This document shows, piece by piece, positions 34,502 through 62,934 of a DNA stretch of 64,000 nucleotides. The stretch is from Zygnema circumcarinatum SAG 698-1b (lineage: Eukaryota > Plantae > Zygnematophyceae). Made by a program: the position numbers and the translations under genes. Position 1 is the first letter of the stretch, and every line of letters starts with the position of its first letter. Where the stretch lies: contig CM074810.1 of assembly GCA_037447605.1 (NCBI GenBank), positions 898,760 to 962,759 of the forward strand, given 5' to 3'. Below the pieces are notes generated by a model. It saw only the letters and a program-made list of their open reading frames with translations, ran no database searches and was not told the DNA's origin.

Positions 34502-41279
<6,778 letters not shown>

Positions 41280-49836: not shown

Positions 49837-51437
49837 GGAAGTCTTGGATCCACTAATGCTTGGGGATGAAGCAGGAGTTGAGTGTTTATGCTCGGCGGCA
49901 AAAACGAAGAAGATCATTTGGGGCATGACTGCTTAAACTGTGAATTTGCAAAGGGTAGTGGCACGTAGTGACACAACGAATATGAGGAAAGGTTGAAAGG
50001 TTTTCTCTTTCCCCCTTTGATTTAGTCATTTGTTGGAGGGGTTGGCAGTCTAGGCACCCGTAGTGCACTGATAGTTTTAGAGTTAATCTAATCGTGCTTT
50101 GTGGAGGGGATGCAGGTATCAAACCAAAGATCAGGGATTCGTCTATGTCATGCTGGAAGGCTACAACTAGCTCCATGGCAGGAGTTAGTTTACATATAGG
50201 CATGAGAGCTGCTGCCAAAGAGCAGCCCTGTACAGAGATGGCCTGTTCCTTATTCAGTTCCGTAACGGTGGTCAACTGAATGGGGATATGGCGTAGAGCA
50301 CATTCGGCTACTTTATGCAACATTCTTATATCCTTCAATCAAGCAACGACCTGTACGGTCGAGGGGTAGACTGCTTCTTATTTCTGGGCATACCGCATTG
50401 CTTTAGGGCACACTCTTCACTGGAGATGTCAGTTGTATCGCTTCCGTCCGATGACCCTTCACAGTTGGGCTCCTTGTTTTGTTTTTGGCCCTTCAAGTTT
50501 GAACATCCAGGAAGGCAACGTATTTACCATAGTAGTCCGTTGCCGACCCTCTGACTGGTGGAGAAGTTGTAGGATTGAGCTTGGATACAAGAGTGCAATG
50601 CACACATTGTCAAGTTCTCCCTTGGTATTTTTAGAATATGGGATCTGGAAACTCTCTTCTTTAAAAAAAAAAAAAAAAAATCATGAGGGGTGGTGTGAAG
50701 GTGACGTTGAGAGAAGTCACAGCTAATGAAAAAAGAGAGCCTAGAAGTAGGGTTCCAGGCAATAGGGGGTTGTAGACTTAGAAAGTTTCACTTTTGGTAT
50801 TCGAAATTATTATACGCTTTCACACGATATGAAGAGAACTAGAAAAAAACAAATTCCACATCAACTTTTTCAACTCTCAGGCTTCCTAAGGGTTGATCTG
50901 GAAAATGAATGCCAGTTTTCACATGGGTAAGCTCCTGCTGCCGCTGCTGCTCACCCCCCGTCCAAGTGAACGGTGTTTCCGCCCCGAAAATATGCAAATT
51001 AGCGATCAGAGGAGGAACTAAAGACGGAGGGGAAACTGAAGCCTGAAGCCGCTCCCCAATTGAAAATACGGGGTTTATGGTTTAAGGGTTTTGAGGTTTA
51101 CGGCTTGGGGTGAAGGGTTCAGGTTCAATGTTTAGCCATGTAAGCGATGTCGCAAATGCGGCCGTTGGATGTGCCACGTGGACGCACGCGACATCCTGGC
51201 CGTTGGAGCTGCATGCCACCTCTGTGAGAAGGCCTGCCAGCGTGGCGGGCTGCGATTGGCCCCACCCAACAGGTAGCGAGTGGGCCACCCGCCATTGGAT
51301 CGCCAACCATTGAAAACACATTGGCAATGGTTGGCAGTGCGGTGGCTCGCAACCATTGGCACTGGTTTTGCAACCATTGGCAATGGTAGATCCAATGGCC
51401 CGACCTGTGCATCGCTGCTATGCTTTAAGCGGCAGCC

Positions 51438-54400
51438 ATGGCCATGGAGGGCTGCCCATGGCTGCTTCTCGCTGCGCTCCTCCTGCTGGCAGCCTCATCT
51501 TCCTGCAGCGCAGACCTTTTCAACGGGGAAGCAGAATATGAGCAGGAGGACCCTGACTATGGATATGGTTTGCAAGAAGACGACGGCAGCCATGGCAAAC
51601 AGGATGCTTCGTTCTTCGAAGTGTTCGACGGAGAGGAATTGGAGGAGGAGTTTTCCGGATGGGATTATGCATATGGGAAGGAGGGAGAAGAGGGGGCCTC
51701 CATCTTGACGCGTATTCAGAGGCCGCGGCCAGATCATCTCAGACGGCGGATATCGGAGAAGGATGTGCAGGAGAGTGTTGCAGTCGACGAGCTGCTTCAG
51801 TGGATGCATGCAAATGGGGCCGGGGGAGTCGCGATGTCTGACAGGAAGCTGGAGGTAAGACTGCATTGGTAAGTTTATGGACATAATTTCCTTCATCTCT
51901 GAAGAGGGGTGCTTTTTGGAACGCTTGATGCTGATCCAGCAGCAGCCCTTGTCCTTACCGTATTTCTAGCTTGCATCTCGGAGGCTATACAAATGAGTTA
52001 TTTCACAAATGTGGATTCAAGCTTGAAAAACACGTCTCTTCTTATCGTCTTTTCTGTCTCTTTCTTCCCCCCTTCCTTCTCTCCCTCTCTCGAATTTCCG
52101 AATGTTGCTGGCTTTAAAACATTTGAAAAGAAGATTGCCACATTGTGAAGCCGTTTTTCGCCCTACATTGCTGTTGGGACAGGTGGCAGTAGTAATCGAC
52201 TCGGGAGTCTTTGCGGAACCACAGTCAGTTGAAATACCAAAGCAGAAATTGAGAGACGGCGGGGAGCGCTCGGAATTTGGACTCAGTGCAGCTGCGGATT
52301 TTGTGAAGGGAGAAACACTTTTCTCTATTCCCAAAAGCTTGTGGGTATCGGATCAGCATGTTGCCAATGAAGTCCTCCCTTATGAAGGAGCTCCCTATGA
52401 TGTTGTTTTGGCGGGGTGGATTTTGCGTGAGGTGGCAAAAGGACGCTCCTCGTTTTGGGCCCCCTTTGTAAACATCTTTCCAAAGAAGATTCAACTACCG
52501 ATATTTTGGACACCAGCTCAACTTGAGGAGATTGACTATCCTTCAGCCATTAAAAAGGTGACTTTGTGCTCATGTTCAAGATGGAAATGTATGCTCTGAA
52601 ACCTTCCCATTATCCTTAGGGATGAGACTGGAAAGGATGTTTCTGTCTCTGTTTTCAGTCTGTACAAGCAATTTCGAATGCAATGTGCCCCCTCTCTAAC
52701 TTGATATCCTGTCCAAGTCACTAAATGTTTTAGGTCGCCGATGCCATTCCAGAAGGCTAATTGAATAGCTTCTCAAATTATTGCTTACTGATGCTTACAC
52801 GGTTTATTGATTTTTTATCAAGTTGAAGAAAGTATGATTTTTGTTGTCGAATTCATATCACAAGCATATATCCGGCGGCACAATTGTTCTCTGAATGCTT
52901 CCCACAAATTGCAGTTTTGCACATGCGAGCATATACTCTTAGTGACTCTCTAACTGAGGGCTATGCATTCGATAGTCATAATTGGTTACTAGACTAATGC
53001 ATCTATTAGTAATTAACAATCAAAGATAGAAAATTAACAGTAGATTTTTTGATAACGATCAGTAATGAACAATAGATCTAAAAGACAGTAGCAATAGAGC
53101 AATAGAATTCTCATCCAAGTAGATGGGTTGTGCTGTGAGGCACTGCATGCATGCTTGTGAAAAGCAGCTACTGTTCTTGTTGACCCATATTGTGACCGAA
53201 GGAAGGAGCTCTGCAACCTCAGTGATTCTATTTGAATTTGAGCCAACCACATGTATGTAGTTTCTGAATGGACGATCTTGTTGTGCAGGTGAGGAACATG
53301 CGTGCTTATCTTGCAAGCGAGCATGCAAAGTACAAGCGGGGAACGGATAGCTCCACTTCATACGATGAGTTTGCGTGGGCCATGGCCCTCGTTTGGACGC
53401 GCTGCTTTCATCTCGAGTTTCTTCAAGGGGGGGGGGAGGGAGAGGGAGTTGGTGCAAGGGAAGCTTCATTTTTGCTTCCATTTCTCGACTTGGCGAACCA
53501 CGGCTTTGAGGCTCAGGCACATTGGGAGGTGGGGCAGACTCTTCTTCTGATAAGGGAATTACAGTTCACATTGTAGAGATGCATGAATGGGAGAGAATTG
53601 ATGCAATTGACATCAACATTCTAAAGAGGACATGGAAGCTATCCCAGCCATCGCATGTAAGAAAAGGACGCTTGTTTTGCAATTCAGCTGTATGGTTGTG
53701 AGGTAGTGGGTGGGGTCACGAGATTGAGACTCTGCTTAACTGCTTGAAGAACTTCAAGCAAGCTGAGAGATGAAAATGAAACGAAAGGGAGAGAAGGCTA
53801 ATAAAGCAACTCGAGGTTGTGGGAGGGCTTCAGGAGCATCCTAGTGGTGACACGGTGACAGTAAAAGCAATTGCGGATGTCGAAAAGGGCATGCAAGTGC
53901 ACCTGCTATATGGGTCGGAAGACAACGAGTGGTTTCTGACAGAGTATGGCTTTGTTCCTGAACCCAACCCACACAATAGCTTCCCTCTATTCAAGAGGGT
54001 TTCAGACATGGTCCACTGGTACAGCAGCACTTATTGGAGTCAAATGGAAGAACAAGCTCTCCTGCTTTCTCCAGAACGTGCAGTGGATGCGGCAGAAGTG
54101 GAAGCGAAAAAGGCAATTGCGGCTGTAGTGAAGCATGTGGGAGGGAGGGAAGAGCCGAAGGAGAGAAATGGACCCGAATTTGAGCTTCAAGATGGGGCAG
54201 GGTTTGCCCTGTGGCCGGAAGCTCACATTGACCCGCGAGCTTTAGCGGCGATTGCTGCAACTTATTTCAGCTATTCGAAATCTGCAGGTGCGACTAAACT
54301 AACCCTAATTGCTCCTTGGGGTCTGGTCCTGACTATCAATTATGCAGATGGGTGGGTCTGAAACCATAGGCATAACCTGCACCCAATGAAAGTTCTTAGT

Positions 54401-55055
54401 TTCAAAGTTTCCTTCTCTACCTGCATGAAGAAGTGTATTCAAGACTGGATGTGTTTTTTGACATTTTGAAATATTATCTTGTGCTGTAGGGCTTGCTTCT
54501 ACAGCGGATATTCTGAACCCAGATCTTGATTATGCCGAGCTTGCGTTCTATGCTGTCAATTTTGGATGGCATATTGACGGAATCGCTTGCAGTTCTGTCG
54601 AACAGTCAGCCTCGAGTGCAGTTGCCTCCTCCTTGGAAGCCGCCGCTGCCGTGTTGTACGATCTGATAGTGGAGACTTTACAAACGTTTAAAACAAGCTA
54701 CGAAGAAGACTTGGAGCTCTGGAATGGCTCTTTATCTGCCCAAGAAATCTGCACTCTTGACGAGAAATCGAAAGAGTGCGAATTGGCTTCAGGGAGCAAG
54801 CTTTCGCCGGAAATGGCGGCAGCCCTGCTATTCAGAATGTCGAAAAAAGCACTTCTCGCCGCCGTGGGGCACCGCATAAAGGACGATTGCGGCTCGAGGG
54901 GTGGGAGGAGGGGGAGGGAGGGAGAGGGAGAGGGAGAGGAGGGGGAGGGGGAGGAGGAGGGGGAGGGGGGTTGGCAACTGGGGGGGGCGGAGTTTGAAAC
55001 CACGAGTCAGCTTGAAACGGACCATTATGATAACGAGGCCTTTGCGGACTATTAG
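51438..55055 (+). CDS. SET-domain lysine methyltransferase of the Rubisco-LSMT/SETD3-6 class with a predicted N-terminal signal peptide, spliced
   Basis: Exons 51438-51854, 52183-52557, 53289-53528, 53834-54287, 54490-55055. Motifs ELLQWMHANG, FGLSAAADFVKGETLFSIP, SSFWAPFVNIFP, LPIFWT, FAWAMALVWTRCF, LLPFLDLANH, LYGSEDNEWFLTEYGF and C-terminal TFKTSYEEDLEL (substrate-binding domain). Confidence 0.88.
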
Positions 55056-55196: not shown

Positions 55197-56480
55197 TGTT
55201 GAAAGGAAGGGAGGGAGGCTCTGATTTGACCTGCTTTGGGCGAGAAGAGGGCTGGATGATGGGGGAGAGAGTACGGATTAGGGTTTCAGAGCTGTGAAGA
55301 AGTTCTGAGGTTTTAGGGCAGGTAGGGAAGTGAAGTCGATCTTCTGGAGAGTGGTGTGTAGATTTTTGGTACTTAATGAAAACGTTTTGCGGTGGATTTG
55401 GGAGCGCTGCTGCTCACTTTATTTGGGGGATTTCAAGATTTTTTTTTTAATAAAAAAAGTTTCTTGTCTGTCGCTTATGACTTCTTTCCTGGTGGGTGTG
55501 TGAGCGAGCCATGGAGTTCACCAAGTTTTTGTTCCAAGGTGCACATCCAACATGGGCATATGTGAGGCGTTTCCATGTGGCGGTAAATCCTGTGCATGCA
55601 GACGGCAACTGCGATCAGTTTCCGTTAACAGTTGCTGTTTTTTCCAGAAGTCAAACGATCAAAAATTGCCGATCTACTATTACAAAGGGAGCGATCCACC
55701 CTTGTTACTCATTGAGAAACAAATATCCAATCATGATTTGCCACGTGTACTCACGTATGACGTGGCGATTTCTGTTTGGTCCATGTTTTTTACATCTTAC
55801 CGCACGTGTCAGATGGTGCGCACGTTTAAATGCGATTGTACAAACCATGGAACTGTACCTTCCTACAGCAACGCGCCGCCGAAGGCTGTTAAACTGCAGA
55901 GCATAGAACGACACAGGCGGCCAATCGTGTAGACGCGTAACCGCCCGTTTGTCGTTTCCTGCCGCCCACGCGGCCGGTCCCGCCGCTCGGATGCTGCCGC
56001 CCAGCCCGCCGCCAACCGCCGCTGCCGCCTCGCACAAAACGACAAATATTCCCGCCCGGGCGCGCTGTCGCGGCGTTAGGGCTTGGCCTCCTCGTACCGA
56101 ATCCGATCTCGCCACGTGGACCAGTTTTCACACGTGGTGCGTTTCCATTGGAGGATGATGATGACAATTGGTTCGAGGCCCTTTCAACGTTTCTCTTTCG
56201 CTCCTCTTTTGCTCCCTCCCTCCCATCTTCCTCTCTCTCTCTCACTCCCTCGCCCTCACCCTCTCTCCCTCTCCATCTCCCACTCTCCCCCTGGGCCTTT
56301 TTCCCACTCCCTCTCCCTCTCTCCCTCTCCCTCTCCCTCTAACGGCGCCCTCTCTCGCTCGCTCATCTCGCGTACGGCAGCGATGGTAGCTACAATGTCG
56401 GAAAGTGCGCTCCGCCGTCGATTCGCGGCGCGGGGATCTTGACGCGTGTGCGGCGCTGAGAGGGGCGGGGAGCGGAGGCC

Positions 56481-62934
<6,454 letters not shown>

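What the first reader, a model, noticed from the sequence alone, without database searches (positions are those of the whole stretch)
51438..55055. SET/LSMT lysine methyltransferase apparently routed into the secretory pathway
Seen: MAMEGCPWLLLAALLLLAASSSCSA|DLF is a textbook signal peptide (Leu-rich h-region, small-residue cleavage site), not a plastid transit peptide. An in-frame TAA lies 12 nt upstream of the ATG. The peptide is followed by an acidic D/E/Y segment, then intact SET motifs (DLANH, YG...EYGF) and the LSMT substrate-binding domain. There is no TM helix or HDEL. Known: LSMT-class enzymes act in plastid, cytosol or nucleus and need SAM. Inference: lysine or histidine methylation inside the ER/Golgi lumen or apoplast, which would be an essentially undescribed pathway. 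Best candidate in this window.
Basis: partly seen in the sequence, partly recalled or inferred. Interest (0 to 1): 0.72.

Follow-up and report, generated by a model that had tools for sequence, protein, structure and literature searches.

The report
Signal-peptide SET/LSMT methyltransferase gene
A green alga close to land plants has an intact gene for a protein-methylating enzyme of the SETD3/Rubisco-LSMT type that starts with a secretion leader shared by its relatives, which points to protein methylation inside the secretory pathway; this is still untested at the bench.

Summary
Window 51438-55055 (+) is an intact five-exon gene of about 689 codons. It starts at an ATG in good context, with an in-frame TAA 12 nt upstream. 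It encodes a leader (MAME, a Leu/Ala core, SSSCSA|D), a roughly 90-residue acidic linker, and then a SETD3/SETD6/Rubisco-LSMT-class SET domain with a C-terminal lobe.

The SAM and catalytic motifs are intact (EFGL, TRCF, DLANH, LLYG). The pocket residues are of the lysine type, not the histidine type.

The gene falls in a zygnematophyte clade (Spirogloea, Closterium, two transcript-like contigs; support moderate, SH-aLRT 80). Nine members whose N-terminus runs well upstream of the SET domain carry a leader plus an acidic linker. Of the rest, those I could judge are truncated or miscalled, and none could be confirmed as leaderless. One Closterium member ends in HDEL. Four clade-specific cysteines in the C-terminal lobe, all present here, suggest disulfides.

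The secretory reading is therefore supported by comparison but not proven.

This scan had already flagged other signal-peptide SET genes elsewhere in this genome (s1-397008, s1-332352, s1-343942). The idea is also not wholly undescribed, because diatom BacSETs are a partial precedent. I class it as a new variant of a known kind.

The parts
51241..51259 (-). Exact ERSE-I-like element (CCAAT-N9-CCACG), 180-197 nt upstream of the ATG. It may be an unfolded-protein-response promoter element, but it is weak evidence.
   Evidence: three exact copies in the window against 0.08 expected. The consensus is given in PMC3645738. It is not conserved upstream of the Closterium homologues.
51290..51400 (.). 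Cluster of CCAAT/ATTGG (CCATTGG) boxes arranged as direct and inverted repeats. This is probably the proximal promoter.
   Evidence: AACCATTGGCA occurs 5 times against 0.8 expected.
51426..51428 (+). In-frame TAA stop codon that closes the reading frame 12 nt upstream of the start codon.
51438..51512 (+). Predicted cleavable signal peptide (residues 1-25): n-region MAME, h-region GCPWLLLAALLLLAA, c-region SSSCSA, with predicted cleavage before D26.
   Evidence: The same feature is present in relatives.
51513..51791 (+). Acidic D/E/Y-rich linker (residues 26-90) followed by the basic patch TRIQRPRPDHLRRRIS (residues 91-106). It is probably disordered. Possible roles as a propeptide or a tyrosine-sulfation substrate are speculative.
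   Evidence: In the relative P0004 the equivalent residues 1-68 have pLDDT below 50.
51792..51854 (+). End of exon 1: the N-SET helix motif LLQWMHANG and the start of the SET domain. The donor is GTAAG at 51855.
52183..52557 (+). Exon 2: N-terminal part of the SET domain, including the SAM-binding EFGL and the WILREVAKGRSSFWAPF block.
   Evidence: Pea LSMT matches at E 5e-5. The representative search gave 119 hits.
53289..53528 (+). Exon 3: inserted region plus core SET motifs TRCF (53397-53408) and DLANH (53487-53501).
53816..54287 (+). Exon 4 (alternative acceptor at 53834): catalytic Tyr in LLYG (Tyr codon 53909-53911), EYGF (53942-53953), and the start of the C-terminal lobe.
54490..55055 (+). 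Exon 5: LSMT-type substrate-binding lobe. It holds four clade-specific Cys (54588-90, 54750-52, 54777-79, 54888-90), one NGS sequon (54723-31), a Gly/Glu-rich tail and the stop codon TAG at 55053-55.

Best explanation
This is a genuine, intact nuclear gene of a zygnematophyte-type streptophyte alga. It encodes a soluble two-lobed SET methyltransferase of the SETD3/SETD6/Rubisco-LSMT class.

Inferred steps: a cleavable N-terminal signal peptide takes the protein co-translationally into the ER. The leader is removed after Ala25. The C-terminal lobe is stapled by two disulfides. Because the protein has no H/KDEL signal and no membrane span, it moves on to the Golgi and beyond, to the wall or the vacuole. 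Where SAM is available, which in plants includes the Golgi lumen, it would methylate lysines of other secretory-pathway proteins.

Shown here: the gene structure, membership of the enzyme class, intact SAM and catalytic motifs, a lysine-type pocket, and conservation of the leader plus acidic linker in relatives.

Inferred only: translocation, cleavage, disulfides, the compartment of action, and the substrate.
For: - Gene model and motifs.
- Class membership: a profile of the relatives plus the window's exons matches SETD3 at 1e-30, LSMT at 1e-23, pTAC14 at 1e-18 and SETD6 at 1e-15. Single exons also hit LSMT, pTAC14 and SETD3 on their own.
- Fold: the AlphaFold model of relative P0004 matches SETD3, SETD6 and LSMT over both lobes, with TM-scores of 0.61-0.71.
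- Pocket: Phe sits at the SETD3 Asn255 position, Leu at the Trp273 position, and Tyr312 is kept. The best PDB hit is the N255F/W273A lysine-converted SETD3. PMC6684798 states that SETD6 and LSMT have Phe at this position.
- Leader in relatives: it is present in P0003, P0004, P0006, P0008, P0015, P0016, P0022, P0057 and P0086, each followed by an acidic linker and the LLxW[LM] helix.
- P0004 comes from a 2.25-kb transcript-like contig whose ORF is closed by an in-frame TAA upstream of the leader's ATG.
- Tree: exons 2 and 3 sit in a 23-row zygnematophyte clade.
- Retention signals: the Closterium clade member P0057 (and its 90%-cluster members P0125 and P0126) ends in HDEL. P0068 (Closterium, not placed in the tree) ends in HDEL. 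P0078, in the other main clade, ends in RDEL.
- Cysteines: four Cys columns are specific to this clade and all are present in exon 5. C1 and C4 are lost together in the P0120 group while C2 and C3 are kept.
- Charge: the flanking charges favour a luminal C-terminus, and the hydrophobic core is only about 12-14 residues long, which is too short for a membrane anchor.
- SAM supply: import into the plant Golgi is documented (10.1101/2021.07.06.451061).
- Promoter: one exact ERSE-I-like element lies upstream.
Against:
- No dedicated signal-peptide predictor was available, so the call rests on simple rules.
- The n-region has no positive charge.
- The closest Spirogloea gene models (P0001, P0002, P0120) show no leader. 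They start at or near the SET helix, and I could not check their loci.
- This protein has no retention signal, so its compartment of action is open. SAM is not known to be available outside the cell.
- The ERSE evidence is weak. The other two exact copies precede an unidentified gene with no ER signature, and none is found upstream of three Closterium homologues.
- The window's own full-length protein was not found in the protein collections.
Confidence: 0.6

Rival explanations
1. The 5' end is mis-read. The real mRNA would either use an upstream coding exon spliced to the CAG at 51433-51435, or start translation at a later Met such as Met122 in QWMHANG. Either would give a cytosolic or nuclear LSMT-like enzyme, and the leader-like stretch would not be part of the protein.
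For: No transcript data could be obtained. Some relatives' gene models start exactly at the N-SET helix (P0002, P0103). The n-region lacks basic residues.
Against: - The in-frame TAA lies 12 nt upstream, and the ATG context GCAGCCATGGCC is good.
- A CCAAT-box cluster lies 40-150 nt upstream, as expected for a promoter.
- The same leader and acidic linker precede the SET helix in at least nine relatives, including an ORF on a transcript-like contig that is closed upstream.
- P0023 looks leaderless only because of a TTG-start ORF call made just after an intron.
Confidence: 0.12
2. The hydrophobic N-terminus is an uncleaved membrane anchor that tethers the enzyme to the ER or Golgi membrane. The catalytic lobes would face either the lumen (type II) or the cytosol.
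For: - The uncharged stretch from G5 to A25 is 21 residues long.
- Some relatives have longer cores or long basic n-regions: P0022, P0042 and Bigelowiella P0026.
- An earlier scan note on sister genes mentions 'signal peptide or signal anchor' (s1-397008).
Against: - The strongly hydrophobic core is only about 12 residues long. It is followed by a polar SSSCSA c-region that fits the -3/-1 rule.
- The very acidic downstream flank favours translocation of the C-terminal side.
- HDEL on a clade member, and the conserved Cys pairs, make sense only for a luminal soluble domain.
Confidence: 0.12
3. It enters the secretory pathway but does not methylate protein lysines. It could be a pseudoenzyme or binding protein, or it could act on a small molecule, as the SET enzyme BurB does on methionine.
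For: - At least one Closterium paralogue (P0008) has lost the NH motif, reading DLFDTD instead.
- A SET enzyme that methylates a small molecule exists (PMC12542666, listed).
- No luminal methyl-lysine substrate is known in plants.
Against: - In the window's protein all SAM and catalytic motifs are intact: EFGL, TRCF, DLANH and LLYG.
- The LSMT-type protein-substrate lobe is retained.
Confidence: 0.12
4. It is a plastid (or dually targeted) LSMT/PPKMT-type enzyme, and its N-terminus only mimics a signal peptide.
For: Most characterised plant LSMT-class enzymes are plastidial. pTAC14/PAP7 is among the PDB hits.
Against: - The N-terminus has a Leu-rich core and no Ser/Thr-rich, basic, uncharged-tail character.
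- It is followed by a strongly acidic segment, which is atypical for transit peptides.
- Hits with a transit-peptide-like N-terminus, such as P0089 and P0063, fall in other clades.
- Clade members carry HDEL.
Confidence: 0.04

Closest known systems
Human SETD3 (actin His73 methyltransferase), SETD6, and pea Rubisco LSMT. These have solved structures, for example 6MBJ, 3QXY and 1MLV.
   Same: They share the two-lobed architecture of a split SET domain plus a helical substrate-binding lobe. They share the SAM and catalytic motifs: the Arg of TRxx, the NH motif and the catalytic Tyr. Profile E-values run from 1e-30 to 1e-15, and the fold match covers both lobes. The pocket has Phe, as in SETD6 and LSMT.
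   Different: The known enzymes are cytosolic, nuclear or plastidial, and none has a signal peptide. The window's protein adds a leader, an acidic linker of about 90 residues, four clade-specific cysteines with a Cys-bounded loop in the C-terminal lobe, and a Gly/Glu-rich tail. Identity to the known enzymes is only about 17%.
Zygnematophyte hypothetical proteins: Spirogloea SM000133S26835/26836 and SM000074S21642; Closterium CAI5474679, CAI5515827, CAI5472921 and GJP78844 (the last ends in HDEL); and Logan contigs ERR12684110_14937 and ERR2041121_1732.
   Same: They belong to the same clade and are 36-50% identical to exon 2. They share the layout of leader, acidic linker and N-SET helix, and the four-Cys signature.
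   Different: All are unannotated and uncharacterised. GJP78844 has HDEL where this protein has no retention signal. Some are probable pseudoenzymes (P0008). Some are truncated or fused gene models.
[quoted passage not shown] 2020, Mar Biotechnol 22:551, doi 10.1007/s10126-020-09976-1).
   Same: They are SET-domain methyltransferases that have been proposed to modify cell-wall-forming proteins made in the secretory pathway. They are co-expressed with silica-deposition-vesicle genes (10.1101/2020.11.23.393678; PMC11151724). That they carry ER signal peptides is my recollection only. The paper is not held, so I could not check it.
   Different: They come from a different lineage (stramenopiles) and a different biological setting (silica walls, silaffin lysines). 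No sequence comparison was made here, so homology at subfamily level is unknown.
Golgi-luminal SAM-dependent methylation in plants (pectin and xylan methyltransferases supplied by GoSAMT transporters).
   Same: This shows that SAM reaches the lumen of the plant Golgi, so a luminal SAM-dependent enzyme is feasible (10.1101/2021.07.06.451061).
   Different: Those enzymes are type II membrane proteins with a Rossmann-type fold, and they act on polysaccharides. They are not SET-domain protein methyltransferases.

Membership tests
SETD3/SETD6/Rubisco-LSMT class of SET-domain methyltransferases | Sequence homology of the split SET domain | tested here: met
   A profile of the relatives plus the window's exons against PDB gives SETD3 at 1e-30, LSMT at 1e-23, pTAC14 at 1e-18 and SETD6 at 1e-15. 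Exon 2 alone hits LSMT at 5e-5. Exon 3 alone hits pTAC14 at 0.02. Pfam SET passes its threshold on relatives P0004, P0086 and P0120.
SETD3/SETD6/Rubisco-LSMT class of SET-domain methyltransferases | Intact SAM-binding and catalytic residues: the GxG-like EFGL, the Arg of TRxF, the NH motif and the catalytic Tyr of xYG | tested here: met
   EFGL is in exon 2. TRCF and DLANH are in exon 3. LLYG is in exon 4. All align to SETD3 residues 104-106, R253, N277-H278 and Y312.
SETD3/SETD6/Rubisco-LSMT class of SET-domain methyltransferases | C-terminal helical substrate-binding lobe (Pfam Rubis-subs-bind) | tested here: inconclusive
   Exon 5 alone scores 17.5 bits, below the 21.6 cut-off. Relatives P0008 (24.3 bits) and P0086 (33.1 bits) pass. 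The model of P0004 aligns over both lobes with SETD3, SETD6 and LSMT. The spliced protein of the window itself was not searched or folded as one piece.
SETD3/SETD6/Rubisco-LSMT class of SET-domain methyltransferases | SAM-dependent methyl transfer to a protein Lys or His | not testable with these tools
   This needs an enzyme assay. Lysine is inferred from Phe at the SETD3 Asn255 position and Leu at the Trp273 position.
Secretory-pathway proteins with a cleavable N-terminal signal peptide | Tripartite n/h/c leader with small residues at -3 and -1, at the very N-terminus of the ORF | tested here: met
   The leader is MAME, GCPWLLLAALLLLAA, SSSCSA|D. This was tested by rule of thumb only, because SignalP and TargetP were not available. 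The n-region lacks a basic residue.
Secretory-pathway proteins with a cleavable N-terminal signal peptide | Leader conserved in orthologues and paralogues | tested here: met
   Nine relatives in the clade and its sister groups carry a leader before the SET domain. One of them sits on a transcript-like contig whose ORF is closed upstream. Three Spirogloea models lack it and could not be checked.
Secretory-pathway proteins with a cleavable N-terminal signal peptide | Demonstrated translocation, cleavage or localisation | not testable with these tools
   This needs GFP fusions or microsome import.
ER-resident luminal proteins | C-terminal H/K/RDEL retrieval signal | tested here: not met
   The protein ends ...DNEAFADY. 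HDEL is present on the Closterium relatives P0057, P0068, P0125 and P0126, and RDEL on P0078.
Plastid LSMT/PPKMT enzymes | N-terminal chloroplast transit peptide that is Ser/Thr-rich, basic, and lacks a hydrophobic core or acidic residues | tested here: not met
   The N-terminus has a Leu/Ala core followed by a segment with 22 D/E in 65 residues.
Diatom BacSETs | Sequence membership of the diatom-specific SET clade | not tested

The most novel reading that the evidence does not exclude
Streptophyte algae at the base of the land-plant lineage would run a so far unrecognised protein lysine-methylation system inside the ER, Golgi and secretory pathway. It would use an expanded family of signal-peptide-bearing, disulfide-stabilised SETD3/LSMT-like enzymes. 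Some would be retained in the ER by HDEL. Others, like this one, would be released further along the pathway to modify wall, vacuolar or secreted proteins. Double-SET relatives in bryophytes hint that part of the system survived into land plants.
Probability: 0.35. Interest if true: 0.8.

Novelty: new variant of a known kind. Interest (0 to 1): 0.6.

Why it matters
SET-domain enzymes of the SETD3/SETD6/LSMT class are known as cytosolic, nuclear or plastid enzymes. A conserved clade addressed to the secretory pathway would imply that methyl-lysine marks are placed on luminal, wall or secreted proteins in the closest algal relatives of land plants. My literature searches found no report of this.

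The idea is directly testable. Useful experiments include localisation of a tagged protein, in vitro methylation by the mature enzyme, and methyl-proteomics of secretome and wall fractions of Zygnematophyceae. It also links to the open question of what besides polysaccharide methylation uses SAM imported into the Golgi.

The value of this particular locus is tempered in three ways. The scan had already flagged sister genes in the same genome. This copy lacks a retention signal. All the evidence is comparative.

Tried and rejected
Expression and the 5' end are therefore untested.
- Word search with exon 1 among short proteins found nothing. This is uninformative for longer relatives.
- Word searches with the family profile and with Spirogloea P0120, SET region only, returned only 3-4 proteins and not the window's own product. 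Low-complexity words probably swamped the candidate lists.
- Pfam on single exons is weak, because the SET domain is split over exons.
- The ERSE lead was pursued and downgraded. None is found upstream of three Closterium homologues. The other two exact copies in the window precede an unidentified gene with no ER signature.
- P0023 looked like a leaderless full-length relative. Its ORF is in fact a TTG-start call immediately after an intron on an unspliced contig, so I rejected it as evidence.
- The Spirogloea P0002 locus could not be fetched.
- Disulfide geometry could not be checked, because model coordinates are not exposed.
- A search of our findings by sequence was blank.
All searches of the window's product were made exon by exon, by reference.
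Full report
**1. What is in the sequence**

Window 51438-55055 on the + strand reads as a five-exon gene:
- Exon 1: 51438-51854
- Exon 2: 52183-52557
- Exon 3: 53289-53528
- Exon 4: 53816-54287, with an equally in-frame alternative acceptor at 53834
- Exon 5: 54490-55055

All junctions are GT/AG. The pieces add up to 2070 nt, or 689 codons before the TAG stop.

The ATG sits in the context GCAGCCATGGCC.

Exon 1 begins MAMEGCPWLLLAALLLLAASSSCSA|DLF. It has a 12-residue Leu/Ala/Trp core (the best 11-residue hydropathy mean is 3.07) and a polar c-region with Cys at -3 and Ala at -1. Residues 26-90 hold 22 Asp/Glu, 2 Lys/Arg and 5 Tyr. A basic patch follows (TRIQRPRPDHLRRRIS), and then the helix LLQWMHANG that opens LSMT-type SET domains.

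No other segment reaches membrane-span hydrophobicity. The protein ends ...NEAFADY, so it has no H/KDEL.

**2. What enzyme it is**

Pfam hits on single exons are weak, because the SET domain is split across exons. Each exon nevertheless finds the same class by itself:
- Exon 2 hits pea Rubisco LSMT at E 5e-5.
- Exon 3 hits pTAC14/PAP7 at E 0.02.
- Exon 4 hits SETD3 at E about 0.8.
- Exon 5 hits Rubis-subs-bind at E 0.007.

A profile built from full-length relatives plus the window's exons (A1) gives SETD3 at 1e-30, LSMT at 1e-23, pTAC14 at 1e-18 and SETD6 at 1e-15.

I folded the relative P0004 with a 16-row alignment. Mean pLDDT was 75, and residues 1-68 (leader plus linker) were below 50. The model matches SETD3, SETD6 and LSMT over both lobes, with TM-scores by target of 0.61-0.71.

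In the window's protein the SAM and catalytic residues are intact: EFGL, the Arg of TRCF, the NH of DLANH and the Tyr of LLYG. At the position of SETD3 Asn255, which hydrogen-bonds the histidine substrate, it has Phe. At the Trp273 position it has Leu. PMC6684798 states that SETD6 and LSMT have Phe and Ala at these positions, and that removing Asn255 shifts SETD3 towards lysine. The best PDB hit of the profile is in fact the N255F/W273A SETD3 mutant. I therefore infer lysine methylation rather than histidine methylation.

**3. Is the leader real? Evidence from relatives**

I searched 1.84 billion representative proteins with exon 2. There were 119 hits, only 13 of them below 1e-10, and the best was 50% identical. 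The source look-ups place the closest ones as follows:
- Spirogloea muscicola: P0001, P0002, P0003, P0120
- Closterium species: P0006, P0008, P0016, P0022, P0057, P0103
- Two Logan contigs of transcript size: P0004, P0015
- More distant: Mesotaenium (P0086), the liverwort Riccia (P0005) and Bigelowiella (P0026)

A maximum-likelihood tree of the SET region was built with the quick search, which gives SH-aLRT support only. It puts exons 2 and 3 in a 10-row subclade with the Spirogloea proteins and Closterium P0016/19/22. That subclade lies inside a 23-row zygnematophyte clade (support 80), which in turn lies inside a 37-row clade (support 98). Exon 4 is short and was not placed reliably.

Nine relatives carry a hydrophobic leader, followed by a net-acidic linker of 11-234 residues and the LLxW[LM]xxxG helix. 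These are P0003, P0004, P0006, P0008, P0015, P0016, P0022 and P0057 within the 23-row clade, and P0086 just outside it. Their N-termini all run well upstream of the SET helix.

For P0004 the contig has 78 nt of leader sequence, with an in-frame TAA at 25-27 before the ATG of the signal peptide. In P0015 an upstream in-frame ATG would only lengthen a basic n-region.

Clade members without a leader fall into several groups:
- Truncated models: P0019, P0036, P0007.
- Models that begin exactly at the SET helix: P0002, P0103.
- Models that look fused or have odd N-termini, which I did not check further: P0013, P0018, P0024.
- One ORF-calling artefact. P0023 'starts' at a TTG straight after an intron on an unspliced contig.
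- Spirogloea P0001, P0120 and P0121, which lack a leader as modelled. I could not fetch their loci.

**4. Further signs of a luminal life**

- *Retrieval signals.* The Closterium clade member P0057 ends in HDEL, as do its 90%-cluster members P0125 and P0126. So does Closterium P0068, which was not placed in the tree. P0078, in the other main clade, ends in RDEL.
- *Cysteines.* Four cysteine columns in the C-terminal lobe are a signature of the 23-row clade, and all four are present in exon 5 (GIACS, EICTL, KECEL, KDDCG). In the P0120/P0001/P0121 group the first and fourth are lost together while the second and third stay. The second and third bracket a variable loop that SETD3 lacks. This fits two disulfides, C1-C4 and C2-C3. 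I could not measure distances, because model coordinates are not exposed.
- *Charge.* The flank after the core is very acidic and the N-flank is neutral, which favours translocation of the C-terminal side.
- *SAM supply.* SAM import into the plant Golgi is documented (10.1101/2021.07.06.451061). Cofactor supply is therefore not an objection there.

**5. Promoter**

A cluster of CCAAT/ATTGG boxes lies 40-150 nt upstream of the ATG. One exact CCAAT-N9-CCACG element is at 51241-51259. This matches the plant ERSE consensus CCAAT-N10-CACG (PMC3645738). The window has three exact copies against 0.08 expected.

I give this little weight. The other two copies lie in a G-box-rich stretch before an unidentified gene with no ER hallmark. 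None is found upstream of three Closterium homologues.

**6. Mechanism I consider most likely, and its rivals**

Most likely (0.6): the leader takes the protein into the ER and is cut after Ala25. The C-lobe forms two disulfides. The soluble enzyme lacks a retention signal, so it passes to the Golgi and beyond, and it methylates lysines of secretory-pathway proteins where SAM is present. The acidic Tyr-rich linker followed by RRR could be a propeptide or a sulfation substrate. That last point is speculation.

Rivals:
- A mis-read 5' end (0.12)
- An uncleaved membrane anchor (0.12)
- A secretory protein without protein-lysine activity (0.12)
- Plastid targeting (0.04)

**7. Comparison with what is known, and novelty**

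The enzyme class is well known (SETD3, SETD6, LSMT, pTAC14). What is unusual is the address.

A full-text search for SET domain + HDEL + methyltransferase found nothing relevant. A broader search on ER-lumen SET enzymes also found nothing relevant.

A partial precedent exists in diatoms. [quoted passage not shown] 2020) are co-expressed with silica-deposition-vesicle genes and have been proposed to modify cell-wall-forming proteins. That paper is not held. My memory that BacSETs carry ER signal peptides is therefore unverified.

This scan had already flagged sister genes in the same genome. There is a head-to-head pair 126 kb beyond this window (s1-397008), and a signal-peptide plus HDEL gene on another piece (s1-332352, s1-343942). 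Those notes gave me the lead to look for HDEL. I then found HDEL and RDEL relatives independently in public proteins.

I class the finding as a new variant of a known kind, with interest 0.6. It is a real, coherent and testable oddity. It is also comparative only, not unique to this locus, and this copy lacks a retention signal.

**8. Limits and omissions**

All work on the window's product was done exon by exon, by reference.
- No signal-peptide predictor was available.
- The window's own full-length product was not found in the protein collections.

Noticed in passing
window 55727-56151: There are two more exact CCAAT-N9-CCACG (ERSE-like) elements here, at 55727-55745 (+) and 56133-56151 (-). 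They lie in a stretch rich in CACGTG and TGACGTGG motifs, between the SET gene's stop codon and a CT-rich leader of the next + strand gene. That gene has coding pieces near 57719-57846 and 58313-58600 and has no Pfam match.
   Followed up: partly
window 36872-39884 and 59560-60806: There is a 3-kb almost pure (AG)n microsatellite of about 1500 repeat units, with GC and AT skew near +0.94. There is also a 1.2-kb (TC)n tract. CT-rich and proline-like low-complexity runs lie at 56212-56748 and 57909-58266.
   Followed up: no
window 58145-58154: A run of ten N marks an assembly gap. It lies inside the CT-rich stretch of the neighbouring gene.
   Followed up: no
window 51060-51130 and 57130-57360: Degenerate telomere-like or telobox-like repeats are present (GGTTTA/GGGTTT; TTAGGGTTCCAAT repeated several times). 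They flank the SET gene's promoter and also lie in the next gene's upstream region.
   Followed up: no
window 53816 vs 53834: Exon 4 has two in-frame AG acceptors 18 nt apart (ctcgag|GTT and gcttcag|GAG). Homologue alignment does not decide between them. This could be a NAGNAG-like alternative acceptor pair.
   Followed up: partly
P0008/P0006/P0124 (Closterium; L005): These paralogues keep the leader, the linker and the cysteines, but the SET NH motif is replaced (DLFDTD instead of DxxNH). They are probably catalytically dead members of the family.
   Followed up: partly
P0005 (Riccia fluitans KAL2609007.1) and P0011 (Logan contig): These proteins of about 1070-1084 residues each carry two tandem SET-LSMT modules. 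P0011 starts with a clear signal peptide (MEAMLLLLLLLQGALSCAAAPG). They suggest that land plants (bryophytes) retain a related secretory double-SET protein.
   Followed up: partly
L003 1-540 (Logan SRR8128906_27110): The 583-residue ORF of P0023 is called from a TTG codon directly after an acceptor-like TAG. The contig is unspliced at its 5' end, so the apparent lack of a leader is a calling artefact.
   Followed up: yes
P0039, P0065, P0092, P0115, P0087, P0078 (ENA, Logan and JGI contigs of unknown organisms): A second, separate clade of LSMT-like proteins also has signal peptides placed directly before the FxxWFxxNGG helix. One member ends in RDEL. Their source organisms were not identified. 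They may include the diatom BacSETs or other protist families.
   Followed up: no
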